A stretch of DNA of 64,000 nucleotides from Malacoraja senta. Taxonomy: Eukaryota. Made by a program: the position numbers and the translations under genes. The stretch lies in contig CM075988.1 of assembly GCA_038087875.1 (NCBI GenBank), forward strand, positions 15,500,001 to 15,564,000. Reading direction: 5' to 3'. The notes under the pieces are model-generated. The model made no database searches, was not told the origin of the DNA, and saw only the letters and a program-made list of their open reading frames with translations. Below are positions 1,871 to 27,100 of the stretch, one piece after another. Position 1 is the stretch's first letter; every line of letters begins with the position of its first letter.

Positions 1871-1999
1871 AAAGTCATTAGTGCAACCAAAGACAGTTCA
1901 TAAAAGTTAATAGTTGGGGTTAGTGTGTGTACTGCAATGAAGTGAAGTCAGATTACTGCTACAGCAATAAGAGAGTGCCTCCAAAAGGAGATGACACTA

Positions 2000-2435
2000 C
2001 GGCACAGTGGCGCAGCAGATAGAGCTGCTGCCGCACAGCGCCAGAGACCTGGGTCCGATCCTGACCTCGGGTGCTGTCTGTGCAGAGTTTGCACGTTCTC
2101 CCTGTGACCACATAGGCTTCCTCCCACATCGCAAAAATGTGCGGGTCTGCACGTTAATTTTCCTCCATAAAATTGTCCCTAGTGTGTAGAGAGTCGATGA
2201 TAAAGTGGGATGGGTGCCTGGCATGCCTTGATTAGTCAGAGTATTGAGTATAAGAGTCAGGAAGACATGTTCCAGCTTTAGACAACTGGTGAAGCCACAT
2301 TTGGAGCATTATGTGCAGTTCTGGTTGCCTCTACAGGAAGGATGTGGGGAATGAATGGGTGATCAGTGGTCAGTGTGGACTCGGTGGGCTGATGTGCCTG
2401 CTTCCATGCTGCATCTCTGAACTAAGAAACTAAAA
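2000..2435 (+). mobile_element. HE1-type tRNA-derived SINE with internal CR1 fragment (about 2220-2350)
   Basis: ggcacagtggcgcagc head with A/B-box-like motifs, V-domain-like gagtttgcacgttctccctgtgacc, CR1-like tail. Confidence 0.8.
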
Positions 2436-3567
2436 GACTACCTCAGAACCGCACTGTACTGTCAGCCTGGAATCAGGACTCCGGTTTCTGTCATGAGGAA
2501 ACTTCTGACATTATTTTCAGTCCCTTCTTTAAGTCTCGGCATTTAACACGCCTCAACGTGATTATCCGCTGATTGCATTTAAATTTGCACGACTGGTGGC
2601 AGCTAATTATTAGAGCATCATCTGTGCAGCAGGATAGTTTATTGGGGGTAAATTCTCATTGAATTCTGCCTAAATCATCCAGAACTCACAATTAACTATT
2701 TTGATTTCCTTGCAAGAAAGTGTACGGTAAGGGCAGCAGGAGGCTGTCAGAAGGTCTGCAAGTCCGTGCAGTGAGATCAATGCTTCAATGCTGTTTTATT
2801 TGTCACATGCACAACTGCTCAATGACTGCGGAGATCTGGTCTGCTCCCTCACTTTTTATTCAAGAAATTACCATCAAATTTATCAATAATTCATAATCTG
2901 ATGATTTAAGTTTCTATGACCAATGGTTCTGTATTTCCCAGCCAAGGAAAAGCCTCTTCTCGTTCTCCAGAAATCGTCTCCCATTTTTCTAAATTCTTGG
3001 GAATATTGACCTTGTCATTTGTTGGTTTGTTTTTGCCTTGAACCTATCCATGCTAATGTATTACCCTAATTCCATGGGCCTAGTTTTGTACAATAAACTT
3101 ACTGCACCTCACGAAGCACCATCAACTTTATATTTCAGTCAGTATGAGGGATGAAGGGCTGTAATCGTGAATCAGTGGCTCATTTTAAGAATCTCATGGT
3201 AACTTCTTGAATGGTTTTCAAAAATCCCAATATATTACATCTACCGGTTTATTTAAATAATCTCCTCTCTACAACCAAACGTAAGGATAGACATAATGGA
3301 CTGATGATTCTACGAAAAATAACTTATCTTTCATAAATCTTTGTTGATTCGTGCCGATTGTTTTCCAGGGGCCCTGTTTGCTATTTCCTTATTGTTGAAT
3401 TTTAATAATATCCCGATGACTGATCTCAGGATAACAGTTACCGTTTCCTGATTTCTCTCTCCTTTCCTGAATGACTGGGTTATGGTTGCTACCTTCCATC
3501 CACAAGACCATTCTAAAACCATTCCTGGAGCTCAAACACTACAAAACTGCCATCTATGTAAGTTATT

Positions 3568-3985
3568 ATTCAAGATTCAAGTGTTTTATTGTCAAATGTC
3601 CCAAACAGAACAATGAAACTTGCAGCAGCACAACAGAATATATAAGCATAGTACTCTGTAAACAATATAAAATATGATAAAAGGTTCAATATTAATAAAA
3701 ATATATATATATTTATGTGTACATCAGCACACATAAAACAAACAAACAGTAATAGTGCAAAAGGACATAACTAATGTCCCGAAGTCTATGTGGTTCAGAG
3801 CTTATTTGAAGGTTGTAGTGTTTAACAGCCAGATGGCTGTAGGGAAGAAGCTGTTCCTGTTCTGAACGTTTCAGCCTTCGGGCTCCTGTATCTTCTTCCC
3901 GATGGTAGGAGTGAAATTAGTGTGTGGCCAGGGTGGTGTGGGTCTCTGATGATGCTGGCTGTCGTTTTGGCTGGCAGCTGGAAAT
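3568..3985 (-). mobile_element. Rex1/Babar-type LINE 3' fragment
   Basis: IIRDPHHPGHTLISLLPSGRRYRS. Confidence 0.75.
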
Positions 3986-5507
3986 ATATGTAAGCTTTGA
4001 CAGATGTACAAGACTGAAGAGGTTGTGATATCTCAACAGTCACCAAATCCCAATATCTGATAAGTGTTACACCTCCCACACACAGCCAACTGCTTGCGAT
4101 TCTAGGTGCCCGCATTACATTACCTCCTTCCTCTTCCTGTTGCATGCTTTCATTTGCATCTTTGTTATCTCTAGCCAGCATCAGTAGATGCAGCAACACG
4201 CCGTTAACTCATGTGTTATTAGATGCATTTCACTCCATCTCACTCATTGAGTCACAAGCAATGTTGCCGATTACAGGAAGCACATTTGTAGCTGAGGTTA
4301 CACTTGTTCAAATGGACTATGTGCCACTAAGGCCTATCCTTACAAAATACCATGCACCTTATATTTCAGTCAGTATGAGGGAGTGAAGTGCTTCATAATT
4401 CAGTGAGTTATTTGCAGAATCTCATGGTTTACAAATATCCCGACCTGCTTGCCATTCTGTTGGAGTTGGATAATTTGTAGTGAGTTAAAGACTGAAATCT
4501 AGTTGACAGATTCGGGAGGTTTATGTAACATGAAAAATATAAAAAATAATCCTTACGATACGGCTATTTGGGTAACAGAAATTTGCCGCTACAGAATTAC
4601 AAATCACAATCTGAATATGAGCTATGGAACAAAATTCCCTCTTACAGAATTTATGCGTCAAGTTTTATTTTAGTTTTGTCTGCATTTATTAGCATTTATT
4701 AGCCCCCCCCCCCCCCCCCATAAATTGCATCCAGGTATAATCAATACCTGGATGCAATTTACAAGCTGAAATGTAACAAAAGGGTTTGGATGCTTTATGC
4801 TTACAATCGAGACACTGGTGAGTGCGTCACAGGCTGATAAAGGGGTTAGTCATTTGTATGCAGAATATGTTCACCTTCTAGGGTTTTTGTGTGTAGCGGT
4901 GTTCAATAGGTGAAAAATGATGATACATCCTGAATTACGGTTTTATAACAAACAGCAGGGACACGTTCACACCACGTGGAAGCCACATAGCATTTATTTT
5001 GTAGTTATCAATCAAATTACAAATTAAAAACTGATTGCAGAAAATCAGTTACAATGGTTAGACAACGGCCAGTGTTGAAAAGACAAAAAGTGTGGGATAA
5101 AGATAGAAGATGCGTGAAGCCATTGGACTGAATACAGGTGGAAAGGGAGTGGTGGGGGGAGAGGGAACGAGGGATATGGGTGTAAATCCGGATGGGGCAC
5201 AGAAAAATGAGGGGGGGAAGTGAGGGGGGGGGGGGGGGAGATATTGGAGTTGTTTCTGTTTGAGCTGTTTTCACACATTCTCCATCCCTCTGTCTGACAC
5301 TCAGGCACATGGTGGAGATTGGTTTTGACATCTCGTGGAGAGTGAGTGTCCTCGATCAAAAATTTGACATTAGGAAACCGGAGTGGAGAATGTTGCACAG
5401 AGCAAGCTTGCACAAGAGATGTTTACCAAGTTCACAGCTTTGTGGAATGCCTGCAATTTCCAAAGATTCTGTGTTCCGTTTCTCCATCCCCAAATCACGT
5501 ACAAAAA

Positions 5508-9400: not shown

Positions 9401-12400
9401 AGTCGATACATAGGAGTCTAACATAGTTCATGTTATCTAAGTGTTCCAGAGATATGTTTAGGGCCAGGTAGATGGCACCTGCTGTAGACCTGTTGCAACG
9501 GTAAACATACTGCAGCCGATCAAGGCTGGCTGGGAGGCTGGAGTTAATATGTGCCATCGTCAGTCTATCAAAGCACTTCATGATGGTGGATGTCTGAGCC
9601 ACTGGACGATTGTCCAGCAATCTAAAATTCTCTTCCCCAAAATGTTGTAGCGTCTGGAGGTTAATTGAACCTTTCACAAGAGATCTTTTATTTTCCTAAG
9701 GGCAGCACAGTGTTCAATTGTTAGTATATCATGGTTCAGTTGCTCTTCACTCAGAAAGTTGCAAATTCAAGTTCCAATGATCTTGTATGGGATCTCCAAT
9801 TCAAGTTCCAATAATCTCATATGGGATCTCCAATACCCATTGCTGGGATATGGACATGTTTGTAATGGGCCATGAATTGACCCAACTGTATCAAGGCCAA
9901 AAGGTTGGCCAAGTACATAATGGCCTTATAGTTAGAAGAAGAAGTGGATGAGACATTCAGTACAGGTGTGGTGAGAACTAATAAAATAAATGGTAACCTT
10001 TTCTCCCCTTCGAAGATGCCACACAGTAGATCGCCAAAGCGATAAAGACAGTAGCAATAAGGTCTCCAATCACAATTCCAGAGATCGTGTTGGCATCCAG
10101 TTGCACACAATTCTTACAAACTGAAAACAAAGGTAGGACAAAAATGTATCAACATTTTATATTATATTTAACTCAATATAATTTTTTAAAAATCTATTGT
10201 TCCTGTTTTGTGCGCTCATTCTGGTGCTGCAGCTGACCACCTTCTTATGTTCACCCGGTGCTGAATTGGAGAACATAGCCCTGATGTTCAAATTCTACTT
10301 CTGTCTCGGAGAATGGTAGTCCACCACCTCTTTTGTTCCCAGCCCAATTTGGTAATGGTTCCAATGAGGAACTCAGGGTCAGGTAAGTCAGGGACAGCAA
10401 TGCAACAAAGAGCAACACTAACATCATGCCCAACTCTAGTTATCACATCTCTTCAAGTGTTACATAGAAAAGATCAACTTACGTTTGACAAACACAAAAG
10501 CTGTCGATCTCTTTTGGCCAACAGTGCAGGTATATTCTCCAGTATCGGTGTCCGAGAGCTTTATCAGTTTCATATTACCATCGTGCGTTTTCCCTGCATA
10601 GTTCACTCCGTCCTTCTCCCATTCTCCAACAATTGGACACTTCATAATGATGCCACCAGACTCTTCCTTGATCACTGAGGGGGACGAAGCACAGGAGCTG
10701 AGCAGCACTGACAGTGCTACTGACTGGAAGGTGAGCTCCCTGTTGGAATTCAAAGTCTGATTCCCAACTAGTAATTTGCGCTCAGCTTAGCTAGTGTCAA
10801 TCTTAGATCAGAATGCTGATGTTGTAAGAGAAGCCAAGGGAGAGAAAAAGGAATGGATCTTCCCACATGGGTGATGCTTGGCAATGGTTTAACATGAAAA
10901 AAGCTTGCAAGTTCACATCCCCGCATAGTTTTCTAGGCCCCTGACTCTCAGTCTGAAGAACTGAAACGTTCTCGACTCAAAAACGTCACCTATTCCTTTT
11001 CTGACCCACTGAGTTATCCAGCTTTTTGTGTCCATCTATAGTTTTCTGGAATTGCTTGCTTAAATTTGATGATTTGTAATTGAAAGGTATATAATCTTGA
11101 AAATAGCCAAGGTGTTGGAAAATTATAACTGGATCACTAATGTCCTTAAAGGAGAGGGACATTAGTCATATGCCTGAGACAAGATTAGCATTTCCAGAAT
11201 TTTAAACTCTGAATTCAAATTGACAAACTAAACTTTGGACATACAGCTCTGGATTGCTCTTTGTTGTATTTTATTTGTCTTCATGATATTTTATTATTCT
11301 GCTCAGTTGCTTATCAGTTTATTCTCGACTGCTGATCTATACTCTATGTGTAGCATGGAACTGCAGATGATGGTTTACACCAGCACAAGATAGACACAAA
11401 ACGCTGGAGTAACGGGACAGGCAGCATCTCTGGTCAGAAGGAATGGGTGAGGTTTCGGGTCGTGTTTCAGTCTGGAAAAGCGTCTCGACCCGAAACGTCA
11501 CCCATTTCTTCTCTGTAGAGATGCTGCCAGTCCCATTGAGTTACTCCAGCATTTTGTGTTTATACTATATGTGTGTTGGTAGTCGAGGAGAAACATGTAA
11601 GCAAACTATCAGGATCTCGGAAGTTTTCCGGTCTGGAAACTTGATTCACTTTCTGGGTCACATTGTTTTGCAACTTAAGTGGAGGTTCAATGAACTGAGT
11701 GTTCAGTGCTAGGAATTATCTTTACACCTTAATCTTTAACTGGCAAGCTCAAGGCAATTGCAAAGGGAAGAGGCAAACAAAGTGAAATCAAAGAAATAGC
11801 AGAGATCTGGGCAGGGAGTCACCCTAACAGCTTGATGTTAACTGCAAAGGTGGAGTAAGAAATTACCCACTTGCTCTCTTATCCATGCAATGTTTCAAAG
11901 ATAAGAAAATAAGGTTTTCATTGAAAACTCTATTAAAAACTGTGGAAAATCTAACAAATCCTAACCTTCAGTTTCTTGCTATTCATAACTCAAAGTAACG
12001 TTTAACCCCAATAATTTAAAATCAACGGCTTACCAATCATTTCTTGAGAAAACCCTAAATAGAAAGAAATTGAGAAAACAGTCACCAGGGCAGCATGAAT
12101 TTCAGTTTACAATTAAATGCAAACGCTGACAGTAAAGGCGACAGGTGTACACACACACACGCGCGCGCGATTCATGCAATCAGTAAATCCCATTATGTAC
12201 CATGATTGTCTCCACAGGGTATGGATCATATAACTGCAGTATTGTCCAAGCAATTAGAGTTGTCATGAGCTTTTGCTCTGCTCATTACCTCTTAATTTCA
12301 TAACCAGGTACTCTGTGTACATGTCCCTGAACTGTGCAACCCACAATGAAATTGGACCTCATTAGTGGGGTTGAGATATGGTTTGATTCTTCTTTTCCTT

Positions 12401-15400
12401 ACTTCAAAATAATGAACAAAATTAGTGAACAGTCGTTTAAAACAGATGTGCACAGGAACTTCTCACTGAGGGTGGTGAATCTCTGGAGTTCTCTATTAAA
12501 GAGGGTTGTCATGATGTGATAATTGGGTGTATTTACAAGTAGAAATAGAAACATTTTCAAAAGTTCAGGGAAACGGGATCTTTGAGGAAGTGGCACAACA
12601 GAGGAGATGAGTCCAGGGACAGGTCAGCCATGATCATATTGAATGGTGGACCATGCTTCTATCTGCTCATGTTCTTAACCAGGAAGTGAACTTGAAATCT
12701 GATATCCCCTCCTAGGCAGAGGTGCAGTTGATCGGTTTAGGGGCAGAAATCAATTATAAAAATGAAAAATGATTAATGAACAATTGCAGTGAGAACAACT
12801 TAATATCAAAGAGCAGATCTGGTGAGGATATGTCCTCGGATGTGACCAAAGTCCATTCAGGCAATGAACAGTGAACGACAGATGGCGCAATGGGCTAAGT
12901 GTTCGGCTGGCAACCGGAAGGTAGCCGGTTCGAATCCCGCTTGGAGTGCATACTGTCGTTGTGTCCTTGGGCAAGACACTTCACCCACCTTTGCCTGCGT
13001 GTGAATGTTGATATGTTGATCGGTTTAGGGGCAGAAATCAATTATAAAAATGAAAAATGATTAATGAACAATTGCAGTGAGAACAACTTAATATCAAAGA
13101 GCAGATCTGGTGAGGATATGTCCTCGGATGTGACCAAAGTCCATTCAGGCAATGAACAGTGAACGACAGATATCAACATATGGATATGGATAATTCTCTG
13201 TAAAGCACTTTGGTTTCAAGTGATTTGATTGAAAAGTGCTATATAAATACAAATATTATTATTATTATTATTATTATAGTTTCTCCCCTTTCTTGCTCTT
13301 GTGTTGTAAGAATAGTTTTAGTTTAGCTTTTGTTTTATTTTATTTTTAGCTTTAATTTAGTTTCCCTCCTTTCTTACTCGTGATGCAAGTATATAGACCT
13401 CAAGTCAATCTTTACATTTATCTTGACAGATATAATATGATCCTCTTACAGGCAGCTGTTTCAATGGCAAATTAGCTGCGAGTTGAGCCACAGTTTGCAA
13501 GTATGCCCTGAAGTTAGGGGTTGCCCAGGCAACTTAAGAATCACATCCGCCAATGATAAATGATAAGCAAAGCCCTACAGCTACACATAAAACATTCTTC
13601 AGATTGAAATTTATTCAGTATATAATCCCTGAAGGTGCAAAAATGTTACATATGGCCTATATTGTTCCATACATTTACCCAATCATGCACATATGAAAGA
13701 TTTAATTGTAGACAGATATACAAGAAGTTACTCCAGCACTTTTTTTGAAATACAAAAAGTTCTCATGGAAAAAGATCTAAAAAAAAATCCATCACTGAAG
13801 ATTCAGAAAAATGCCATTATTCAATTAAATGCCACTTGGATTCCCTCAGCTATGATGCAAGCAAAACATAATGCCTTAACAGAAAAACAATACAGTACAA
13901 GTGTTCATCTTTTGGCACAGGAGATAACTTGTAGTTAAAATACACCACAGAACATGCAAAGACATTAAGGAACGTTCCCAGCACCAAAATGTAGCAGCCA
14001 TCATTAAAAAATACATCAATTGCAAACTCTGTCCAAATCGTACAACTGGATTTGCTTCATTAAAAAAAAGTTATGTCCGGAAACTATAATATAGTGACCT
14101 TTACTGAACTATGGGAGCCAGTATTTTTCAAAAGTCTGAAAATATTTGGATGTGTATCCTTAATTAATATCCTCCAGTGAGCTTTATGGTGTACCATTTC
14201 TCCTCAAGGAGTATCTATGCAGTGCCATTAAGGGTCAGGCCTGCTGCAAATGATCGGTTAGCACCTCTGACCAACAAACAGGGTTCTCTGTTACATGAGT
14301 TAGCATAAGACATCCGCAAGCATAGGTGTACAAGAAACCACCATTGCCTGGGAGGAAACTGTGACAAAAGGAGAATATTTCAGATAGAAAAAGAGTTTGG
14401 GTCTGTAGTTGAGTTTGACATGTTCCTGAGCTTTCATCACAAGGCATGCCGTCAACATCCTGACCACCAAATGGGGACCTTCCTCATCTCCTGTATTATA
14501 ATAACTAAAGTATTATTATAACTATTACAACTAATAGTTGCAAGCCCACAAAGGAAATATTCTTGTTCTGCATGGACAGAGCAACATTAGGAGATGCGTT
14601 TGTTCACAAGTCACTGTACAACTTTTCAGAGGGTGAGTTCATCTCTGAAGGATCCCCATTGAATTTGTACCATTTGTGAGCATTTGGTCCAATGCTTGAC
14701 CGAGGTCATTGCATTAACAGGCAGACCGAGGGTATATGTGTATGAAAGAATTGCAGATGCTGGTTTAAATCGAAGGTAGACACAAAATGCTGGAGTAACT
14801 CAGCAGGACAGGCAGCATCTCTGGAGAGAAGGAATGGGTGACGTTTTGGGTCCAGACTCTTCCTCAAACTGTCTCGACCCGAAACGTCACCCATTCCTTC
14901 TCTCCAGAGATGCTGCCTGTCCCGCTAAGTTACTCCAGCATTTGTGTCTACCGAGGGTATACGTGTTGTGTTCACATCACTCAAGTCACATTTGGATCCT
15001 TCTTAGAAGTGCCTCATCCTTCAAGGCAAGTGAAATCCAGGGAGATGTGTCACTGAATCTTGAACTCAGAGAAGGTGAACAGCTTTTTTTTGAAAGCCTT
15101 GTCTGATTACATCCCCGGGATCATTCCCAACAGAGACTGGGATATCAGTCCTGGAATGGCCAGGACAATGGTGGAGAGCTGGCAACACACAAGCCCACCG
15201 ATGTGAAGTTAAGGGAGAGATTGATGGTAATCTCTAAAGCACTGGACCCTACACAGTGGCACTTCACAAAACTCGCACATGAAGGAGGTCTCCACTGATC
15301 TCCCGGACGCGGTTTTGCGCTTGCATCTCGAGCAATCCCGGCACACTTTCTTGCGCCCCTCTATCTTCACCATGTTGTGCGCTCTGGCATTGCTGAAACC

Positions 15401-18400
15401 CGCCTGGTATCTAGTTTCTGCCGACTAGGACAGCCTGCCCTTCCTGCTCCCTCCCGCAGAGTAATCCCCACGGAGCATCTTGGCCAGAGCCGTCCTGAAG
15501 TTGAGGTGGTCATAGCGGTTGGGGAGCGGTGGGTCGTGAGATGACCTCTTGAAGATAAGCCAGGCATTGACGATGGTAATATTCAATGAAAACCACAAAA
15601 GACATCTCCACCACTTTTTGGAAGGACGGCCCACAGGATAATAGCTCCTCATTTGATCAGAAAGATCAACACCGCCCATGTACTTATTATACTCAGTGAC
15701 CACCTGAGGTTTGATCACCCCCGAGCTGGCAATCATCTTGGTCCCTTGATTGTTTGAAAGCGTGACTACTTGTCGCTTGTCCTTCCAAATGGTTAACAAC
15801 AACGATCCCTTCTGAAAGAACCGAACGTCGCCCTGTCTCTTGAGCTTCATCTTCTTGGCTTGTGCGGGGATGCCTTTGCGGTTGAGGTGTGCGGTGGAGC
15901 ATGCCCTCGTCCCTCGCTCCTCCAGGTGCTCCAGCAGAACGGGGCTAGCGAAGAAGCGGTCAAAGTACACGTGGTGATGGCGGTGGAAGTAGGGGCGACA
16001 CAGCTCCATCACCACGTCGTGTCCGGTGCCGTGTGGCGACACCGACCTCCGCCGCCCCGTGTACACGTTGAAGTTCAGGCAGTAGCCCGTGACAGATTCG
16101 CACAGCATCCACACTTTCACACCCCACTTTGTCGGCTTGGCCGGGGCGTACTGCTTGAAATACAGCCGCCCTTTGTAAGCCACCATGCCCTCGTCCACAC
16201 TCAGGTCACGGCTCGGACGGTAACATTGGCCAAAGAGGCCGCGCACCACCTCCATCAGGCCTCGGACTTTGTACACTGGGTCGTGGTCGGGGTCCGATCT
16301 GTCGAGGGCGCCCCTGTTGTCCCGGAGGTGGAGATACTGATTTAGTTTCCAAAACCTGTCCCTGGACATGACAGAAGAGATCCATGGGCAGCGGAGGGAG
16401 GTGTCTTGGCTCCAGTACAGGGAGATGCGAGGCAGTTGCTTGATGCCCATCATGATGTTGATGGCCAGGAAAGCCTTGATTTCCTGGGACTCTGTGGGGG
16501 TCCAAGAGGAATCCCTTTTGCCTGCTTTCTCTTGGCACTGGGCAGCGTAGCGATTGGTTTCCACGGCTATGGTGTCGAACACGGTGTGTGGCCAGAGTAA
16601 CGTGAAGTAATCCAGTGGGCTGGCAGTGGCTGGAAGCTGGTGCTGAGGGCCGCTAGGTTCAGTGAAGGGCGGTACATGAATATCTTCTAGATCAGTGGTC
16701 CACTCTACACCCTGATGCCCATCTGCCTCGTTCCCAATGGACAATTCTCTCTCTCCACGTCCAATATCCTCAGAAGTCCTCACATCGCTCTCAGATTCCA
16801 TTACAATTTTAAAGAAGACGGTCAATTGGACTTTTCTTCCCCCAAACCCCAAAACGTTTGGTTCATTGATAGAACACATACAATGTTCGAAAATACCGCG
16901 CTGTGGGGATAAAAAGATGTTATAGTCAAAACGCGTATTTGATCTTTTCAATGGTGCCATGCTAGTAACCAGCGTCCAAACTGACAGAACCAGCTTACCA
17001 GTTTACGTCTAAAGAAGGGTCCCACCCGAAAATATATATTTTTCTCCATAGATACTGCTCGATCCATTGAGTTACGCCAGCACTTCGTGTCTATCTATCT
17101 ACGACAGACTTGCTGGCATTTCATTTAGAAATCTGCGAGCTACCAAATCCCACTGCAACAGTACTTCAGTACCCCAATCCCCTCAATATGGGGAAATGTC
17201 GCTAGCCTGAGGAATGCTGCAATTTTTTCTCTCGTTCATCTCAGCGAATTGCGGAATATCTTCGGTTAGAAATGCAATAAACTCACGCGGCAGCAATGGA
17301 AAGGGCAAGCGACGACACAGTGATCACCTGGAACTGGCTGATGCCCTAGTGGAGTCTCCCTCTCGGTTGCGTTTCTTCCCAACTTCGAATATCAATGCTA
17401 AAGTTTTATTTTATACTTTCATCTGCAGCGGGTAATTTGGGGAGGTCAAGATTAAGTTCTGCCTCAATGGCCTAAGATCATTGGTCTGACATGTCATCTC
17501 TCTCTCCCACAGATGCTGCCTGACCTGTTGTGTATTGACAGCACTTTGTGTTTAAAACTGTGATCAAATTGACCATGTTTGGTCTGATAGAAACATAGGT
17601 ATAGAAAATAGGTACAGACGTCGGCCATTCGGTCCTTCGAGCCATTCAATATGATCATGGCTGAACAACCAAAATCAATACCCCGTTCCTGCTTTCTCCC
17701 CATATCCCTTGATTCCGTTAGCCATAAGAGCTATATCTAACTCTCTCTTGATTCATGGATAGATTTTATGGGGTTCAAATCAATGACTTTCATTGTGGTG
17801 GGTCTGTCCTGGCCGTGGGTCGGTACATACCGAGAGAACTGAGGAAGAATCTGTAAGGTCTGATTCTATCAATAAAGCTCTGTCAAGTTTGTGATGAACG
17901 ATCTGTTGCAACGCATTAACAGGGACATTATGAAGCGGGACTGTCTTTGTGATACAATAATCCGTCTACAATGCCAAAACCAATATCACTTACTTCAATG
18001 TTTGTGTCACACTGTGTTACAAATGGTCCCAATTCTTGGCAATAACGTGGCAAACTACTTTACCTCTAAATCGCAGTATCCAGCACAGGGCACAATCGCC
18101 CGATGTTCTCCACAGACGCTGCCTGGCCGCTGAGTTACCCCAGCACTTTCTGTAAACCAGTATTTGCAGTTCTTTGATTTTGCAACAGCCCGGAGTTCAG
18201 CCGGACTCGTTCTGACTCGGTAACCGGTGAATTAACCGATGCCAGGCTCGTGTACAAATATAAAGGGTCTCGACCCGAAACATCGCCAATCTCTTTTCTC
18301 CAGAGATGCTACCTGACAAACTTTCTATGTCCTTTCGCCCAGCTCACACCTCAGTCACAGGGCAACTGTTCCCCAAGACGCAGTCAACAACTGATATCCC

Positions 18401-19513
18401 CAAAAGTTAGGGAAACGAGAATATAAACGTTGCCTTTATTTCACGCATTTTAAAATATTGCTTAGCATCTGTAATAAAATATGGCTCTTTGGTGACTTTT
18501 TGCAGAGTGGGAGAGAGAATAACTGAGAGCTGCAACTGTGAAAGGACCAAGCATTCTTGAAATCTGGATGGGGAAGGTGGAGTGGGGAGGGGGGTTAAGA
18601 GTTGAGGAGAGGAAAGGAGATAAGAGGGGAGGAGAGGGGGAGGGAAGCGGAGTTGAGAGATGGGGAGAGAAGTGGAGTGAGATGAGAGGATAGAAGAAGG
18701 GAGGGGTGGGGAGTGGAGAGGAGCGGGGCAGGGGGAGGGGGATGGGGGGGAGAGGGGGAGGGAAAGGGGAGGGGTTGAGGGTGGCGGTTTTGCGCGTGTG
18801 CATCGGGCGGCTCTCCGGAGCATTGGGGAGGTGGTGCCCGCAGCCGGTCCCGGAGCGCCCGGCACAGGGCGGCACGGGCCGTGTGCGCAGGGAATGGGTT
18901 AGAGACCAAGAACCGGGGAACCAGCGGGACTAAGTATTGAGTTAAAACTAAACTCTCAATTGCAAATAGTTTAATAGCTGCAGATATTATACATATTGCA
19001 ATTGACACCTGCGGCATTTGCTGTTCTTATACAGCAAAACCGCAAGGACAAGCTGCTGGCTTGCTCTACTTTGTAAGAAATATTTTAACTCAAAGCATGT
19101 ATTTTGTCAGGTAGCAACTGAAATTATAAGACAGATCCGGGGTCATGCAATCCAGGCACAATATTGAAATATGTTTGCAGTTTCTAAAATAAAAATCATA
19201 ATTTACAGAACATAAAAAAACATTTCTATATGCGTTGGGAAAATACTACTTAACAACTGTAGTTTGTGTTTTAAACCGTACAGTCTGTAAAGAAATCGGA
19301 CCAACTATTGTTATCAACCTAGCGTGCATGTAGGGGTTTAAAAAGTGATTAATTTATAGCTCAGAGGTTTGCTCAGGTCTGGTTACTGCTTCATTCGCCC
19401 AAGTTGTCGATCTCACTCGTACATTTATGTCAAGGACTTGCTCCGAAAGATTTTAGTTTGCCTTTAAGCGGCCCTACAACTAACTAGTGGCAAAAATATA
19501 TATCCCCCCCCCC

Positions 19514-19551
<38 letters not shown>

Positions 19552-20073
19552 GGAACCAAATATCAATCTTTTCACTTTCCAACCCTTGCATAAAATTGTT
19601 TGTCCCCCTCCTTCAAAGCAATCTCCAAATTAACGCGAAAATAGGAATTCGATCGCATTTGCTGTTGGTTCGCGTTCACCTGCCAAGCCGGAGTCTACAT
19701 TCAACGCTATGTATATATTGTTACCGCTAAAGCGAATAAACAGCCTGCCTCGTTGGCCGCTAATTTAGCGTTACAATTTCAGGGCAAAGATTTATTACAA
19801 AATATATATTCGTAAATACTAGTTGTGGAGTATTGACAGTGAATACTGACAAGTATAATTACTAATAGTAATTTTAATAAGGATCCCATTAACATTCGGC
19901 TGTATTTGTGTCGGTCCACTTACTGAAGTTAAAGCATAGCAGTTTGATATTTTGTTTAATTAATTGCAAACTCCCCCCCCCCCCCCCCAGAGTATAAACC
20001 TTTTGATATTGATCTTACCGAAGAGCAAGATTGTCGCGCCTATCGCGAACACGAGGTTCCTGTAAAACTGCAT
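6421..20073 (-). CDS. T-cell surface glycoprotein CD3 gamma/delta chain (6 coding exons, 166 aa)
   Basis: Exons 20073-20019, 12054-12034, 10674-10483, 10120-9998, 8502-8456 and 6483-6421, all GT-AG and phase-compatible (501 nt). Protein: signal peptide MQFYRNLVFAIGATILLFGFS, Ig domain (C...W...DTGEYTC), CKNC stalk motif, TM with acidic Asp (GIVIGDLIAT), SDEQHLV motif, single ITAM YQDL-x8-YSQL. No proline-rich motif, so gamma/delta type rather than epsilon. Confidence 0.9.
7177..7337. mobile_element. Penelope-type palindromic short element with 15-bp TSD
   Basis: TSD tttaatcaaaatgaa at 7162 and 7338; contains CTGAAGA...GAAACGTC. Confidence 0.78.
8456..8502 (-). CDS. CD3 gamma/delta exon 5
   Basis: ASDEQHLVPHNNDLYQ, resembling mammalian CD3G ASDKQTLLPNDQLYQ; cttttcttccag acceptor, CAG|GTAAGG donor. 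Confidence 0.9.
8575..9610 (-). mobile_element. Rex1/Babar-type LINE RT remnant
   Basis: RPVAQTSTIMKCFDRL, YVRLLCIDYSSSFNTI. Confidence 0.75.
9998..10120 (-). CDS. CD3 gamma/delta exon 4 (CxxC stalk and transmembrane)
   Basis: LCKNCVQLDANTISGIVIGDLIATVFIALAIYCVASSKGRK; the donor G|GTTACC is weak but in the required phase. Confidence 0.88.
10483..10674 (-). CDS. CD3 gamma/delta exon 3 (Ig-like domain)
   Basis: VIKEESGGIIMKCPIVGEWEKDG...DTGEYTCTVGQKRSTAFVFVK; acceptor gtccccctcag, donor C|GTAAGT. Confidence 0.9.
12034..12054 (-). CDS. CD3 gamma/delta exon 2 (21-nt microexon, GFSQEMI)
   Basis: Strong acceptor (ttttctcaatttctttctatttag) and donor (G|GTAAGC); phase 1-1; completes the signal peptide cleavage site. 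Confidence 0.7.
12727..13171 (+). repeat. Exact 157-bp direct duplication (12727-12883 and 13015-13171)
   Basis: Read directly from the sequence. Confidence 0.95.
12875..13278 (+). mobile_element. tRNA-derived CORE-like SINE with (ATT)n tail, interrupted by a local duplication
   Basis: A box (gatggcgcaatgg), B box (ggttcgaatcc), CORE-like gtgtccttgggcaagacacttcacc, tail tgtaaagcactttg...aaaagtgctatataa(att)n. Confidence 0.7.
13610..13615 (-). terminator. Candidate polyA signal of the nested piggyBac transcript
   Basis: AATAAA on the minus strand followed by GU/U-rich sequence (tgttttatgtgtagctgt), about 1.6 kb downstream of the transposase. Confidence 0.35.
14742..14949. mobile_element. Penelope-type palindromic short element with 17-bp TSD
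   Basis: TSD accgagggtataYgtgt at 14725 and 14950. Confidence 0.8.
15209..15424 (-). pseudogene. piggyBac C-terminal cysteine-rich domain, in frame behind a TAG stop
   Basis: After TAG (15425-15427) the same frame stays open for 71 codons: SAETRYQAGFSNARAHNMVKIEGRKKVCRDCSRCKRKTASGRSVETSFMCEFCEVPLCRVQCFRDYHQSLP*. Confidence 0.85.
15425..16960 (-). CDS. piggyBac-family DDD transposase (PGBD4-like), 511 aa ORF nested in CD3 intron 1
   Basis: piggyBac motifs with all three catalytic Asp: DLSVDEGMVAYKG, KPTKWGVKVW, VYFDRFFAS, YNKYMGGVDLSDQ, plus KKWWRCLL. The true start may be MESESD at 16802. Confidence 0.93.
   Translation of the reverse strand: MAPLKRSNTRFDYNIFLSPQRGIFEHCMCSINEPNVLGFGGRKVQLTVFFKIVMESESDVRTSEDIGRGERELSIGNEADGHQGVEWTTDLEDIHVPPFTEPSGPQHQLPATASPLDYFTLLWPHTVFDTIAVETNRYAAQCQEKAGKRDSSWTPTESQEIKAFLAINIMMGIKQLPRISLYWSQDTSLRCPWISSVMSRDRFWKLNQYLHLRDNRGALDRSDPDHDPVYKVRGLMEVVRGLFGQCYRPSRDLSVDEGMVAYKGRLYFKQYAPAKPTKWGVKVWMLCESVTGYCLNFNVYTGRRRSVSPHGTGHDVVMELCRPYFHRHHHVYFDRFFASPVLLEHLEERGTRACSTAHLNRKGIPAQAKKMKLKRQGDVRFFQKGSLLLTIWKDKRQVVTLSNNQGTKMIASSGVIKPQVVTEYNKYMGGVDLSDQMRSYYPVGRPSKKWWRCLLWFSLNITIVNAWLIFKRSSHDPPLPNRYDHLNFRTALAKMLRGDYSAGGSRKGRLS
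17589..17750 (-). mobile_element. HER1/CR1 3'UTR fragment
   Basis: Matches the 3' end of the other HER1 copies in the window. Confidence 0.75.
18560..18780. repeat. Purine-rich (G/A) low-complexity tract
   Basis: About 220 bp of almost only G and A with many G runs. Confidence 0.9.
19504..19549. repeat. (C)n(CA)n microsatellite
   Basis: Read directly. Confidence 0.95.
20019..20073 (-). CDS. CD3 gamma/delta exon 1 (signal peptide)
   Basis: ATG...MQFYRNLVFAIGATILLF(G), 55 nt, phase-1 donor G|GTAAGA. Confidence 0.8.
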
Positions 20074-22660: not shown

Positions 22661-23873
22661 TTCGTGAACACATGTAACATTCTCATTTTCCAATAGGAAC
22701 CCCTTCACTCTTCTCAACTCCAAGGTATACAGATGATATTATTTGTATTATTTGAGTTACTTATTTGTTTGTTTTCCTTTGTGTTTTATTTTCTTTTTAT
22801 TGCTTATAAGTTTATTTGTGTTTGTATTTTTTAACATGTTCAATAAATAAGAGAAAAAAAAAAAAGAAGAAAAAAAAACTTAATTATCTCACCTTTCTTG
22901 ATAGGACAATCCTCTAATCCCAGGGATTAGCCTGGTGAGTTTCTTCCACATACCCTCTTACCCCATTTTGCCGCACCACACCCACTCTATTTAGAGACGG
23001 ATAAGTTGATGTTGTTATTGAAACCCTACTGCATGGAGCCAAGATTCAGACCTACACAGAAAGCTTTCCTTGCTGACTAGCATTCACTTTCCAAGCTGAA
23101 ACACCCAAGTGCTGTATGACTGAGATACCTGAGGGTATGAGGGATGAAGCTTTATTACTCAGGATTACTCAGCTCCCATAGAAGTGAAAGCAAGGAAAAC
23201 CAAGTACAAAAACATAAAGGGCTTGCACTTATATGGCTCCTCAAAATGTCCTCAATCTCTTTACTTCCATAAAAAAAAGTACCTCAGGACTGTTGCCATT
23301 ACTGTAATGTAGGAAACGCAGCAGCCAGTTTGTATATTGCAAGGTTCACACCCACAGTAACACATTAAGTGTTTATTTTAGTGATGTCTGTCAAGGGGTA
23401 AGTATTGGCCAGAGCACTGGGGAGTAGGACTTGCCGTTCTTCAAAATAGTGAGGTTCAGTGGGGAAGGTAGAACAGGCCTGAGTCTGTTCCAAAAGAGGG
23501 TCACAACACTGTGATCCTTCGTATCCGAGTGGAGGTGTCAGCCTCGATTATGTGATCAAATGACCCCAGTTGTACGTTGCACTCAGAGGCACGTGTGATA
23601 TTCACCAAACAGAATTGCAGTACATGGGGCGGTTATACAGTATAAAGACTTTGACTTTGGCCAGCCCTGCTAATCTGGAACAAAGAAGCCCTGAAAAGTC
23701 AACTGACACTGGCACCTGATAGTCCCCTCTCTCTTTTTCTTTCTCTCTGGTGAGCCTGCAGTAAACTCGCTTACTCACTTGTTCAACTACAATTAAATTG
23801 AGGCTCAGATATCGTTATGCCTTTCAAATTTAAACAACCCCCCATTGAGCACTTAAAGTATGGGTTGTGTGAA

Positions 23874-23887
23874 AGTGCCATAGCAAC
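23874..23887 (+). promoter_or_regulatory. RFX X-box-like site upstream of SAXO-like gene
   Basis: AGTGCCATAGCAAC, with a perfect ATAGCAAC right half, about 170 bp upstream of the ATG; typical of ciliary gene promoters. Confidence 0.55.
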
Positions 23888-24059
23888 AGGCATACACTGA
23901 AGAGATTGGCGTATAATTAAGCATGATCAAGGAACACTGACTGACCACAGCCAGGAGGAAGTTCTTCCTGGACACGCTGTGGGACACTTTGAAAGGATTT
24001 GCTCCGTTTCTGAGCAACATTTCTCAAGGAACATATTTCAGAAAGAAACGTTTATTGAA

Positions 24060-24139
24060 ATGGCTCTGAATTATTTGAGAAAGCTAGAAGACATGGAGTT
24101 CTCGGAGTTCTCGTGCCTGTGTGAGCTGTGTGATTGTGG
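24060..24139 (+). CDS. SAXO-like exon 1
   Basis: MALNYLRKLEDMEFSEFSCLCELCDCG, donor GG|GTAAGT; in-frame stop upstream at 23898. Confidence 0.78.
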
Positions 24140-27100
24140 GTAAGTGTGTCTCCAATATAGGCAAGGTTAAATAGGTTCACAAAAATGCTGGAGAAACTCA
24201 GCGGGTGCAGCAGCATCTATGGAGCGAAGGAAATAGGTAACGTTTCGGGCCGAAACCCTTCGCCCGAAACGTTACCTATTTCCTTCGCTCCATAGATGCT
24301 GCTGCACCCGCTGAGTTTCTCCAGCATTTTTGTGTACCTTCGATTTTCCAGCATCTGCAGTTCCTTCTTTAACACAAGGTTAAATAGGTTAGTGTTTAAC
24401 ACGGCGTATTTTGTAATGTTTTCATTTCAGTCCAAAGCTTATCACAGTTGAGGGAGCACTTCTGAACTGTAACCTCTGTTGTGATATTGTAATGTACTAT
24501 GGTCAATCAGTACCGTGTGTTGAATCATGAATGAATTTGCAAGAAATATTATTACATTTAGTTTTGCCACATTCCACTTTATTGTTTAAGTGTATCCATA
24601 AACAGTAAACCCCAATCCTTCCATTCTTCAGTCCCTCAACCCCCCCCCCCAAAATCATTGTTATCCAAGCTCATCTTTTCTACCCCCACCTGAGCCTAGC
24701 ATCTCAGCATTGTACTTTCTTTTCCACCCCTTCATGTACAATGCCACACCTTTAATCTCAACGCCATTCTATCTTGTACCAAACTCTACTCCTTCCACAT
24801 TAACATTACCTGCCTACCATAGCCGCAGTTCTATCCAAAGCCGATACATTCTACTTATCACTGCAGTAACATCTACGTCCTTCTACCTGAACCCCCAAAC
24901 TCTACCTTCTATTCCATTCCAAATTCTACCCTTCTATCGAAGCAACCAGTGGCTGGGGTCCAATGCCAACAAATAAAAATCATCCCTTGCCGGCAAAGTT
25001 CAACACCAGTATTTGCTAAGGTAGCTGGTCATTGATCACCACATCTCTGACATCACAATATCAGTGACATCTCAGAATAATAGGATTCATTGAGCCAAAG
25101 GTACAACTCTTGATCACTATCGATTTGTCCTGCTGGTAAGTGTCCATGGATTTTTTAAATCTTAACCATGATGTCCCATTTGGTATGCCCTGCCTATTCT
25201 CACACTTGAATAATGGTCTTTTGAATGAGGGTGTTGGGAGGTAACCAGTCAATTTCCTCAAGTTTGGAGGAGAAACATTTTAGAACATTAGTTATTGTAA
25301 TTCTGAAGTTCTTTATTGGCCATTGAGCACTTTGAGGTATCCAGTGGGGCATGACTGGCTCGACTTACAAGATCTCTATTATGAACATTACCTCAAGTTT
25401 GAAAGAAATCCCTGGACTATCATAATACTCGCATCTTAATCCCATCCCCCTTCACCAGGAGTGTGGAAGTATTGAGCTTGGAATGGTGATGTTTCTTGCT
25501 AATTTAATGAGAACGTTGTGCCTCACTGAAGACATGACAAATAGGAGCTGCAGGTTACAGGTTATCCTTTGCAATGCTGGAAATTGAAATTGAAATTTGT
25601 GTTCTTCTGTTTCCAGACTGTCAGGTTTGGCAAGCATGCAAGTTTCTGTTAAACATTCTACTTTTTTAGGCACTCTCATTGGGTAGTGATAAGCACATCT
25701 GATTCCAATTGTTCCATGTTGATTAATATTGACAAGATGTGAGTGAACATAACTGTGAGAGACTGCACTTAATGTAGGAACCTATGACATCATCTTCATA
25801 CGACTTCACAAAGAATGATCAGAATATGTAAATGCTTAGATGCTATTAACTTCAGAAGAGAGAGATTTAGGGACACAAGTATACTATTACCTTAATTTTT
25901 AGTGACAATGTATATAAAATACATTAAACTATACAGTAACGTGGATAGAGAGAAATGGCTAACTAAGATCAGAATGAAATTGCCTGCTTCAGGTTGGTAG
26001 CTGTAACTGCTGGGATCGTATTAGGGACTTCATGATTCACAGTTCATATTAGAGATGTAATAATCTCAGTATAATCTGCACAAATTTGCTGCTAAGATGA
26101 AGGTGGCAAAGAAGCAAAGAACCTGAGAAGGAGCAAATAGGTTAAGAAAAAATTGTGGCAGATGGTATATAATGTAAGAAATATGAGGTTATGCACTTTG
26201 AGAGTAAGAGTAGCAACAAAGATTGTTGCATCAACAGAGGGAGACTATAACATACCGAGGGATGAGGGTGACGTCATATGAACCTTATCTCAGCATGCAA
26301 ATAGGAGCGAAAATGGAGTGTGACCTTTGTGGTAAAGGGCATGGAGTATATAAAAGTAGGTAAATGTCTCTATAACTGATAAGGGTTGACAATATATAAA
26401 ATGTCTGTTGTTGGTTGGTAACTAGTTTCACCTGGTTACAGCTCCCTGATGAATTCTTCCTTCTCCTCTCCTCTAGTCAACACAAATATCATCAGAATTG
26501 CAAGAAGAAGCAATCAATTCAACGGCGCTCAGTAAGCACAGACTGGCTCCTAACCAACTACCAGTCGTCCTTCAGGCGACCCCTGAGTAAGAACCTTTAT
26601 TACACTGTAATATACTTGCATATCTCCACGTTATCTTGATTAGGTGATAGCTGCCTTCTCTCGTCTCACTTAGGTTTGCTTCTGGTTTTGAGAAGCAATC
26701 TGGACTGACCCACAAGCTGGAGATAAGACTCAAATAGATTTTAGTCAAAGGGGCAATACATCATATCTTAAAATTGGGTAGATTGTTAGGCTCAGATCCC
26801 CCAATGATTTCCATGCTCCCTAAATCTTTGTTTCCAGGGTTACATTTAATAAAGGAATACACCCTTTCCCATCTACCATGCTGTATGCCAGGTCTAATAT
26901 ACACAAGGCAGATATTACTTTTGCCCCTTTATACAACCAGGCTCAGGACTACATCTCTTAAGATGTACTGGGAGTATTCAACAATTAAGGATAATTTTCC
27001 TGGATACAACTGAGAGAAAAATCCCCCCCAAAGATTGTAATTTTGAAGAAAATTCTGTTTTGGGATTTTTTTCTTTGCAAGCAGGAAGTTCTATTTATGT

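What the first reader, a model, noticed from the sequence alone, without database searches (positions are those of the whole stretch)
13590..17430. Candidate domesticated piggyBac transposase gene nested, sense-oriented, in intron 1 of the T-cell CD3 gamma/delta gene
Seen in sequence: a 1.75-kb piggyBac reading frame with an intact D-D-D triad and no frameshifts, lying between CD3 exon 1 (20019) and the microexon (12054) on the same strand. I find no TTAA-CCC...GGG-TTAA termini around it. Instead it has host-gene-like structure: a strong upstream donor (CGC|GTGAGT, exon end 17287), a strong acceptor (atctttttatccccacag, exon start 16900), a decayed repeat inside that 386-bp intron, and a 3' region ending at an AATAAA with GU-rich downstream sequence (13610). 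Established: domesticated PGBD genes commonly lose TIRs, and PGBD3 acts as an exon trap inside CSB/ERCC6. Inference: an immobilised, possibly selected transposase gene in chromatin that is open in T cells, and potentially a lymphocyte-expressed DNA-binding or nuclease protein in a cartilaginous fish.
Basis: partly seen in the sequence, partly recalled or inferred. Interest (0 to 1): 0.85.

Follow-up and report, generated by a model that had tools for sequence, protein, structure and literature searches.

The report
Ancient piggyBac-derived gene inside CD3 intron
A former jumping-gene enzyme (a piggyBac transposase) has sat as a single-copy, protein-conserved gene in the first intron of the T-cell CD3 gamma/delta gene of sharks and rays for hundreds of millions of years. 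In this skate it has recently gained a stop codon that cuts off its zinc-finger tail.

Summary
The minus-strand piggyBac frame runs from ATG 16801 to TAA 15209. It has no frameshift and an intact D-D-D triad, but an in-frame TAG (15427-15425) separates the catalytic core from an otherwise intact Cys-rich zinc finger.

The domestication reading is strongly supported:
- There is one ortholog per chondrichthyan species, 71-95% identical. The next relatives are about 53% identical, and the one examined is a TTAA/TIR-flanked transposon.
- In five other sharks and rays the ortholog lies on the same strand inside a CD3 gamma/delta-type gene. Two of these loci are collinear with the window.
- dN/dS is 0.10-0.19.
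- Read depth matches the flanks, so the gene is single-copy, and no TIRs are found.
- The splice acceptor at 16901/16900, the 5'UTR and the AATAAA at 13615-13610 are conserved in Narcine. The acceptor and 5'UTR are also conserved in Heptranchias.

The TAG is specific to this species. Four related species read TCG (Ser), and there is no sign yet of relaxed constraint, so the truncation is very recent.

A CSB-PGBD3-style in-frame fusion with CD3 exon 1 is excluded by a conserved stop. No RNA runs were available, so expression, splicing and T-cell specificity remain untested. I found no published description. The scan's own reader had already noted the TAG (s1-210390).

The parts
17288..17380 (-). 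Putative non-coding 5' exon of the piggyBac-derived gene. The 5' limit is inferred. It ends at the donor CGC|GTGAGT, whose intron starts at 17286. A TATAAAA-like box lies at about 17413-17407.
   Evidence: Sequence read. The block 17347-17208 is conserved with Narcine (70% identity). The motif CCAGGTGATCACTGTG is shared with Narcine, and from GTGATCACTGT on with Heptranchias, whose fetched stretch starts there. The TSS and actual use of the exon were not tested, as no RNA was available.
16901..17286 (-). 386-nt 5'UTR intron holding a fragment of a high-copy interspersed repeat (about 16934-17201). It ends in the polypyrimidine tract plus CAG acceptor.
   Evidence: Depth spikes to 630-4400 at 16934-17201. 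An inverted match to the MITE lies at 17040-17096. The repeat is absent from Narcine. The acceptor tract plus CAG is conserved in the second skate, Narcine and Heptranchias.
16802..16900 (-). Conserved 5'UTR between the acceptor and the start codon.
   Evidence: Strong nucleotide conservation across the second skate, ray and shark. A 2-nt indel in the second skate shifts the frame relative to the window, so the stretch is non-coding.
15428..16801 (-). Coding sequence of the transposase core (458 codons): acidic N-terminus, DDE_Tnp_1_7 domain, and catalytic D203, D281, D379 (16195-16193, 15961-15959, 15667-15665).
   Evidence: dN/dS is 0.10-0.19.
15425..15427 (-). In-frame TAG nonsense codon. 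It is derived from TCG (Ser) and is specific to the window's species.
   Evidence: L001 has TCG. Contigs of two samples of the window's species match the window with 0 differences. Four related species (organisms B, C, D, E) read G on the + strand at 15426, which gives TCG.
15212..15424 (-). Same-frame continuation of 71 codons encoding the intact Cys-rich zinc-finger domain (zf-Tnp_2), followed by the ancestral TAA at 15211-15209.
   Evidence: PF13842 at E=5.9e-10. All Cys/His columns are shared with Callorhinchus, shark and ray orthologs. dN/dS against the second skate is 0.04.
13590..15208 (-). Putative 3'UTR of about 1.6 kb ending after AATAAA (13615-13610). It is interrupted by a MITE-like palindrome at 14785-14943.
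   Evidence: AATAAA and its surroundings are 75% identical to Narcine, with TGAATAAA conserved. Use of the poly(A) site was not tested.
20019..20073 (-). Host gene CD3 gamma/delta exon 1: ATG plus signal peptide MQFYRNLVFAIGATILLF, phase 1, donor G|GTAAGA.
   Evidence: It is collinear with the annotated start of the CD3-type gene in Narcine (L002:7093) and Heptranchias (L003:4868).
12034..12054 (-). Host gene 21-nt microexon (exon 2), flanked by AG and GTAAGC, which keeps phase 1.
   Evidence: Sequence. The conserved block 12118-12024 is found in both Narcine and Heptranchias.
9981..10786 (-). Host gene Ig-domain exon (within 10786-10463) and the CxxC-stalk/transmembrane exon (within 10148-9981; the motif GIVIGDLIATV carries the membrane Asp).
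   Evidence: Open frames. Weak CD3 Ig hits for the single exon (PF16681 E=0.007, PF16680 E=0.018). The exon is 82% identical to the Narcine exon. The full orthologous proteins hit PF16680/PF16681.

Best explanation
This is a domesticated piggyBac transposase gene, not a transposon copy.

Shown:
- A piggyBac-like element inserted in sense orientation into intron 1 of the CD3 gamma/delta gene before sharks and rays diverged. An ortholog with the full zinc finger also exists in the chimaera Callorhinchus.
- The element lost its TTAA/TIR ends and became single-copy.
- It has since been kept under strong purifying selection, with the D-D-D(+D) catalytic residues and the C-terminal Cys-rich zinc finger intact.

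Inferred gene structure: a short non-coding 5' exon ending at 17287, a 386-nt intron, and one large exon from 16900 that carries a conserved 5'UTR, the whole ORF and a 3'UTR of about 1.6 kb ending at a conserved AATAAA (13615-13610).

Inferred mechanism: the protein acts in trans as a sequence-guided DNA-binding nuclease or recombinase-type factor. The zinc finger would target DNA and the RNase-H-like DDD core would cut or hold it, as in other catalytically intact piggyBac-derived host genes. Its place in CD3 is a frozen accident, because a nested gene cannot easily be separated from its host. That position may nevertheless give it lymphocyte-biased chromatin or expression.

Shown for this species only: a recent TCG>TAG change ends translation after residue 458. 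This species would therefore make at most a zinc-finger-less protein. I read this as a very young loss or weakening of function, not as an ancient pseudogene.
For: - Homology: Pfam DDE_Tnp_1_7 at E=2e-89 and zf-Tnp_2 at E=6e-10. The DDD residues are invariant and aligned to piggyBat 9c0f.
- Orthology: eight chondrichthyan proteins are 71-95% identical, one per species, and everything else is 55% or lower. They form one clade (SH-aLRT 100, stem length 0.47) with a batoid subclade at 100.
- Synteny: the ortholog is nested on the same strand in a CD3-type gene in five other species. The window is collinear with Narcine and Heptranchias from CD3 exon 1 through the ORF to the microexon and Ig exon.
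- Selection: dN/dS is 0.12 against the second skate (45 synonymous and 20 non-synonymous codon differences; binomial p=1e-15), 0.19 against Narcine and 0.10 against Heptranchias. The zinc-finger part scores 0.04-0.14.
- Single copy and no TIRs: depth is flat over ORF and flanks, the window has no other copy, and no termini were found. By contrast, the nearest outgroup, P0009, sits between TTAACCCTTTACC...GGGTTAA ends.
- Gene-like non-coding parts are conserved: the acceptor and 5'UTR in Narcine and Heptranchias, and the AATAAA region in Narcine.
- The TAG is derived and young. Four relatives have TCG. Branch counts are 13S:6N for the window and 16S:5N for its sister.
Against: - There is no transcript evidence of any kind. 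The only runs of this species behave like DNA, with flat depth across the intron. The promoter, splicing, poly(A) site and tissue specificity are therefore inferred from conservation alone.
- In this species the ORF is interrupted, so the protein may be non-functional here.
- The donor is strong only in the skate. The aligned positions read GTGCTT in Narcine and show a shifted GTACAC in Heptranchias.
- Non-coding similarity to Narcine runs through much of the intron, so conservation of the 3' end is only weakly diagnostic.
- Synteny in Callorhinchus could not be checked.
- Within the shark clade the tree is poorly resolved, and Callorhinchus does not branch first.
- Biochemical activity is pure inference.
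Confidence: 0.8

Rival explanations
1. In the window's species the locus is already a unitary pseudogene. The ancient domesticated gene was recently inactivated by the TAG and will decay, so nothing functional is made here.
For: The in-frame TAG removes the zinc-finger domain. That domain is the most constrained part in the other lineages, with omega 0.04-0.14. The TAG appears in contigs of two samples and is absent from four relatives.
Against: There is no second lesion. Substitutions on the window's branch are 13S:6N, like its sister's 16S:5N. After the stop the counts are 4S:1N. The stop lies in the last and only coding exon, so a 458-aa core protein could still be made. The two samples come from one study and may not be independent, so the allele may be polymorphic.
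Confidence: 0.4
2. The cassette works mainly as an intronic exon trap of CD3 gamma/delta, in the manner of CSB-PGBD3. CD3 exon 1 would splice to the conserved acceptor at 16900 and the transcript would end at the AATAAA. This would give a CD3-piggyBac chimera, or attenuate CD3.
For: The cassette is in sense orientation. A strong acceptor is conserved from shark to skate about 100 nt upstream of the ATG. A poly(A) signal is conserved with Narcine. An earlier scan note, s1-210404, proposes this reading.
Against: Exon 1 ends in phase 1. Joined to 16900, the frame stops at TGA after 12 codons in the window and in Narcine, and after 4 codons in Heptranchias. No fusion protein is therefore possible. 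The 2-nt indel between the two skates shows that the stretch from acceptor to ATG is non-coding. A separate conserved upstream exon with its own donor exists. Selection acts on the protein sequence, which a pure attenuator would not need.
Confidence: 0.12
3. It is an ordinary, recently dead piggyBac transposon copy that happens to lie in this intron.
For: It has an intronless transposase ORF, is annotated elsewhere only as 'PGBD4-like', and carries a stop codon. Its nearest outgroup relative is a real TIR-flanked element.
Against: It is single-copy by depth. No TIR or TTAA ends are present. It sits at the same nested position in five other elasmobranchs. dN/dS is 0.1-0.2. The clade is monophyletic with batoids grouped together.
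Confidence: 0.02

Closest known systems
Human PGBD4 (piggyBac-derived gene 4), and the 'PGBD4-like' label NCBI gives the shark and ray orthologs
   Same: Both have a single coding exon and a full-length transposase with D-D-D-D and the C-terminal zinc finger retained. Both lack TIRs and are under purifying selection. Ka/Ks for PGBD4 is 0.15 in PMC5381638, against 0.10-0.19 here.
   Different: PGBD4 is restricted to primates according to PMC5381638, so this is an independent and far older domestication. The nearest relatives here are cyclostome and invertebrate-type piggyBac proteins at about 50-55% identity. The name is an automatic label, not orthology. Direct comparison with human PGBD4 was not run.
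CSB-PGBD3 (piggyBac element in ERCC6 intron 5 acting as an exon trap)
   Same: A sense-oriented piggyBac ORF lies in an intron of a host gene, preceded by a splice acceptor and followed by a poly(A) signal, and is conserved.
   Different: PGBD3's acceptor is in frame with CSB exon 5 and gives a fusion protein. Here CD3 exon 1 joined to the acceptor runs into a conserved stop, and a separate upstream non-coding exon exists. PGBD3's triad is degenerate (D N D in PMC5381638). Here it is intact.
PGBD5, and Kobuta, PiggyMac and TPB2 (catalytically intact or ancient domesticated piggyBac genes)
   Same: All are ancient, vertically inherited, single-copy piggyBac derivatives under selection. In Kobuta, PGM and TPB2 the DDD and the Cys-rich domain are kept and linked to DNA cleavage or excision (PMC5381638).
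   Different: PGBD5 has several coding introns and is found in all vertebrates. This gene has an intronless ORF and was found only in Chondrichthyes, with a possible cyclostome sister. No function or DNA target is known here.
Autonomous piggyBac-like element in ENA contig L004 (protein P0009, 53% identical)
   Same: It has the same transposase architecture, with core and zinc finger.
   Different: It is flanked by TTAACCCTTTACC...GGGTTAA termini 3.1 kb apart and belongs to a cluster of 21 sequences. The window's gene has neither termini nor extra copies.

Membership tests
piggyBac transposase superfamily (protein homology) | DDE_Tnp_1_7 catalytic domain with the D-D-D triad | tested here: met
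   PF13843 at E=2.3e-89 over the full profile. D203, D281 and D379 are invariant and aligned to piggyBat 9c0f.
piggyBac transposase superfamily (protein homology) | C-terminal Cys-rich zinc-finger domain | tested here: inconclusive
   The domain is encoded intact at 15424-15212 (PF13842, E=5.9e-10). It lies behind an in-frame TAG in this species. It is part of the ORF in all relatives.
Domesticated piggyBac-derived host gene (PGBD-type) | Loss of TTAA-flanked terminal inverted repeats | tested here: met
   No inverted-repeat pair or TTAACCC/GGGTTAA pair brackets the ORF. The window has no match to the TIR of the nearest element.
Domesticated piggyBac-derived host gene (PGBD-type) | Single copy in the genome | tested here: met
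   ORF depth equals flank depth in four runs covering three species. There is one protein per species and no other fragment in the window. A whole-genome tblastn was not possible.
Domesticated piggyBac-derived host gene (PGBD-type) | Orthologs at the same genomic position in distant species | tested here: met
   Five elasmobranchs carry it nested on the same strand in a CD3-type gene. Narcine and Heptranchias show exon-level collinearity with the window. Callorhinchus synteny could not be tested.
Domesticated piggyBac-derived host gene (PGBD-type) | Purifying selection on the protein (dN/dS well below 1) | tested here: met
   NG86 omega is 0.09-0.20 in all six pairs. For window against L001, the binomial test gives p=1.2e-15.
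Domesticated piggyBac-derived host gene (PGBD-type) | Uninterrupted ORF | tested here: not met
   The window has a TAG at 15427-15425. The feature is met in every other species examined.
Domesticated piggyBac-derived host gene (PGBD-type) | Transcribed and spliced as a host gene | not testable with these tools
   No RNA run holds the locus. X1 and X2 behave as DNA. The only support is conservation of the acceptor, 5'UTR and AATAAA.
Active autonomous piggyBac-like element | TTAA target duplication plus TIRs, and several near-identical copies | tested here: not met
CSB-PGBD3-type host-transposase fusion (exon trap) | The acceptor upstream of the transposase ORF is in frame with the preceding host exon | tested here: not met
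   Exon 1 (phase 1) joined to 16900 stops at TGA after 12 codons in the window and in Narcine, and after 4 codons in Heptranchias.
CD3 gamma/delta (host gene identity) | Signal-peptide exon, microexon, CD3-type Ig domain, CxxC stalk and a transmembrane segment with an acidic residue | tested here: met
   Exon 1 is, the microexon, and the Ig and CxxC/TM frames. The single Ig exon scores only weakly against Pfam. The collinear full-length orthologs hit PF16680/PF16681. The ITAM exon was not located.

The most novel reading that the evidence does not exclude
The gene encodes a catalytically active piggyBac-type nuclease that is co-regulated with CD3 gamma/delta and acts on DNA in the lymphocytes of cartilaginous fishes. 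That would make it a second transposase-derived enzyme, beside RAG, in the oldest jawed-vertebrate adaptive immune system.

The domestication may also predate jawed vertebrates. Hagfish and lamprey proteins form the sister clade (SH-aLRT 98). Two hagfish genera share a protein that is at least 90% identical.
Probability: 0.12. Interest if true: 0.85.

Novelty: new member of a known kind. Interest (0 to 1): 0.6.

Why it matters
Domesticated transposases gave rise to RAG, PiggyMac and PGBD5. Each new ancient case with an intact catalytic site is a candidate for programmed DNA cutting in a host.

This one has kept its DDD triad and zinc finger under selection since before sharks and rays split. 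It is probably older still, given the Callorhinchus ortholog. It is physically locked inside a core T-cell receptor signalling gene.

The 2017 survey of piggyBac domestications lists eight clades and none from cartilaginous fishes (PMC5381638). My literature searches found no description.

The skate's natural zinc-finger-less allele offers a ready-made contrast for testing what the domain, and the gene, are for.

Tried and rejected
- Candidate termini. The TTAACCC at 12002 and GGGTTAA at 18592-18598 were considered as piggyBac ends. I rejected them. The count of this motif in the window is no more than chance (6 found, 8.9 expected). The sequences behind the two sites are unrelated. The 12002 site lies next to the conserved CD3 microexon.
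- A perfect 23-nt inverted repeat at 12624/17642 is part of a common interspersed repeat, not a TIR.
- RNA evidence. Both run searches returned only runs that behave as DNA or belong to related species. Splice junctions and the poly(A) site therefore could not be tested, and table 5 shows only MITE-internal joints.
- A first dN/dS script gave omega near 1 for the window. That was an artefact of mafft --keeplength shifting the back-translation. It was corrected, after timed out.
- Callorhinchus context. The protein is not on record with a contig.
- Upstream in-frame ATGs (16960, and the MCSINE... start) were rejected as true starts. The stretch is frame-shifted between the two skates, and orthologs begin at MESESD.
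- L001 looked at first like a possible transcript contig. It is unspliced and comes from a DNA run.

Full report
**What is in the sequence**

On the minus strand, an ORF from 16960 to 15425 (511 aa) matches the piggyBac transposase domain DDE_Tnp_1_7 over its whole length at E=2.3e-89. Orthologs start at the Met of 'MESESD', which is ATG 16801-16799. The stretch between the proposed acceptor and this ATG is therefore 5'UTR.

The frame is closed by TAG at 15427-15425. The same frame then continues for 71 codons (15424-15212) through a complete Cys-rich zinc finger (zf-Tnp_2, E=5.9e-10) to TAA at 15211-15209. The scan had noted this separately (s1-210390).

The three catalytic aspartates are D203, D281 and D379. 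They sit in the motifs LSVDEG, YFDRFF and GGVDLSDQ. They are invariant in a 12-sequence alignment and align to the corresponding motifs of the solved piggyBat transposase 9c0f.

No inverted repeat or TTAACCC/GGGTTAA pair brackets the ORF.

**The host gene**

CD3 exon 1 runs from ATG 20073 to 20019. It encodes the signal peptide MQFYRNLVFAIGATILLF, ends in phase 1 and is followed by GTAAGA. A 21-nt microexon lies at 12054-12034.

Further downstream are an Ig-domain frame (10786-10463) and a CxxC-stalk plus transmembrane frame with a membrane Asp (10148-9981). The Ig exon alone scores only weakly against the CD3 Ig families. However, the collinear full-length proteins of Narcine and Heptranchias hit PF16680/PF16681. 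The piggyBac ORF is therefore nested in intron 1 of a CD3 gamma/delta-type gene, in sense orientation, as claimed.

**Is it a transposon copy or a gene?** Four lines of evidence agree.

1. *Relatives.* A search of 5.8 billion proteins returned one protein per chondrichthyan species:

| Species | Identity to the window |
|---|---|
| Second skate | 95% |
| Narcine | 79% |
| Heptranchias | 78% |
| Scyliorhinus torazame | 77% |
| Pristiophorus | 76% |
| Heterodontus | 75% |
| Hemiscyllium | 73% |
| Callorhinchus | 71% |

 Everything else is 55% identical or lower. These proteins form one clade (SH-aLRT 100, stem length 0.47). The ray and the skates group together at 100.

2. *Position.* In Narcine, Heptranchias, S. 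torazame, Heterodontus and Hemiscyllium the ortholog lies on the same strand inside a gene with CD3-type products, 2-5 kb after that gene's start. blastn shows that the window is collinear with the Narcine and Heptranchias loci. The shared order is an upstream neighbour gene, CD3 exon 1, the ORF, the microexon, the Ig exon and later exons.

3. *Selection.* NG86 dN/dS values are as follows:

| Comparison | dN/dS |
|---|---|
| Window vs second skate (dS 0.145) | 0.12 |
| Window vs Narcine | 0.19 |
| Window vs Heptranchias | 0.10 |
| Among the other three sequences | 0.09-0.20 |

 Between the two skates, 45 codons differ synonymously and 20 non-synonymously, over 353 synonymous and 1222 non-synonymous sites (p=1.2e-15).

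4. *Copy number.* Contig word depth over the ORF is 32-47 in X1, 3-5 in X2, 22-34 in X3 and 6.5-14 in X5. This equals the depth of the unique flanks where those are covered. The MITE at 14656-15057 reaches millions, and the intronic repeat reaches hundreds to thousands. No other piggyBac fragment lies in the 64-kb window.

By contrast, the closest outgroup protein I looked at (P0009, 53% identical, in a cluster of 21 sequences) sits between canonical TTAACCCTTTACC...GGGTTAA ends 3.1 kb apart. The window has no match to that terminus.

**Gene-like non-coding parts**

The polypyrimidine tract plus CAG acceptor, and the roughly 100 nt between it and the ATG, are conserved in the second skate, Narcine and Heptranchias. 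A 2-nt indel between the two skates shifts the frame there, so the conservation is not coding.

The upstream block 17347-17208, which includes the end of the proposed 5' exon, is conserved with Narcine. Heptranchias shares the motif from GTGATCACTGT onward, where its fetched stretch begins. The donor is strong only in the skate.

The intron's repeat fragment is missing in Narcine, so it is a later insertion. The AATAAA at 13615-13610 and its surroundings are 75% identical to Narcine, with TGAATAAA kept. Similarity to Narcine is widespread in this intron, however, so this is only consistent with a poly(A) site and does not prove one.

**No in-frame exon trap**

I joined CD3 exon 1 (phase 1) to the acceptor at 16900. 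The result reads G|CG CGG TAT TTT CGA ACA TTG TAT GTG TTC TAT CAA TGA. The same TGA ends the frame in Narcine, and an earlier TGA ends it in Heptranchias.

A CSB-PGBD3-like fusion protein is therefore excluded. A non-productive CD3-exon-1-to-cassette transcript (the idea of note s1-210404) stays possible, but it needs RNA data.

**The stop codon**

Contigs from two samples of the window's species match the window with no differences across 14921-17450, including the TAG. The two samples are from one study, and one may be the assembly's own sample, so they may not be independent.

At 15426, four related species (organisms B, C, D, E) all read G on the + strand, which gives TCG (Ser). L001 reads the same. 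The stop is therefore derived and specific to this species.

It is also young:
- Polarised by Narcine and Heptranchias, the window's branch has 13 synonymous and 6 non-synonymous changes. Its sister's branch has 16 and 5.
- Behind the stop, the window's branch has 4 synonymous changes and 1 non-synonymous change.
- dN/dS of the zinc-finger part against the second skate is 0.04.
- All Cys and His positions are intact.

Because the ORF lies in a single last exon, nonsense-mediated decay is not expected (established knowledge). A 458-aa core protein without the zinc finger is the likely product. Whether that is a null, a hypomorph or tolerated cannot be told from sequence.

**How it most likely works**

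Shown: an ancient, immobile, single-copy, selected piggyBac-derived gene with its catalytic triad and zinc finger kept.

Inferred: it has its own short 5' exon and a spliced 5'UTR. The protein acts in trans on DNA, with the zinc finger targeting and the RNase-H-like core cutting or holding. This follows the precedent of catalytically intact domesticated piggyBac genes such as Kobuta, PiggyMac and TPB2, as summarised in PMC5381638. The nesting in CD3 is most simply a frozen insertion site. T-cell-biased expression is an attractive hypothesis, but it is untested.

**Comparison with what is known**

The 2017 survey of the superfamily lists eight domesticated clades: PGBD1-5, Kobuta, PGM, TPB2 and the teleost NeoPGBD. 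It does not mention cartilaginous fishes or CD3. Five literature searches found no description of this gene. NCBI's 'PGBD4-like' is an automatic label. PGBD4 proper is primate-restricted according to that survey.

I therefore class this as a new member of a known kind, namely a domesticated piggyBac gene. It is notable for three things: its age, its intact catalytic residues, and its conserved place inside a T-cell receptor signalling gene.

**Limits**

- There is no RNA evidence.
- There was no whole-genome search for other copies, only depth and the protein database.
- Callorhinchus synteny is unknown.
- Divergence times are background knowledge and were not computed here.
- dS to the shark is near saturation (1.2-1.4), so that omega value is approximate.

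Noticed in passing
window 14785-14943 (wider repeat 14656-15057): A MITE-like palindrome with 73-nt arms that are 95% complementary and 13 nt apart. It is inserted in the putative 3'UTR. Summed contig word depth reaches millions in four runs covering three skate species, so it belongs to an extremely abundant family. Decayed copies lie at 17040-17096, 17507-17554, 18107-18178 and 18263-18315.
   Followed up: partly
P0012 / P0123 (hagfishes) and P0028 (lamprey): Cyclostome piggyBac-derived proteins form the sister clade of the chondrichthyan gene (SH-aLRT 98). The Eptatretus and Myxine proteins fall in one cluster at 90% identity and keep the same zinc-finger pattern. This may be a conserved, possibly domesticated, gene in hagfishes too.
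   Followed up: partly
L004:3662-6781: The nearest non-chondrichthyan relative (P0009, 53% identical) is a 3.1-kb piggyBac-like element with TTAACCCTTTACCATTT / AAATGCTAAAGGGTTAA ends. It lies in a eukaryotic ENA contig among reverse-transcriptase fragments.
   Followed up: partly
window 16802-16900: The 5'UTR after the acceptor is unusually well conserved from shark to skate, for example TATTTT.GAA.AT..TATGTGTTCT.TCAATGAA. In the skates and Narcine, though not in Heptranchias, it holds upstream ATGs. This may be a regulatory uORF or RNA element.
   Followed up: no
window 23220-25657: Blocks here are collinear with a minus-strand gene upstream of CD3 in Narcine (427-aa product) and Heptranchias (472-aa product). 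That gene has no Pfam hit on record, and the neighbour was not identified.
   Followed up: no
window 18500-18999 and 19975-19995: On the + strand there is a strongly G- and A-skewed low-complexity stretch (GC skew +0.56, AT skew +0.26), which is C/T-rich on the gene's strand. It produces spurious proline-rich ORFs. A run of about 19 G on the gene's strand lies just after the CD3 exon 1 donor.
   Followed up: no
P0008 vs P0121 (Callorhinchus): The UniProt model (528 aa) lacks the first half of the zinc finger. The older RefSeq model (557 aa) has it complete. The gap is a gene-model difference, not a real deletion.
   Followed up: yes
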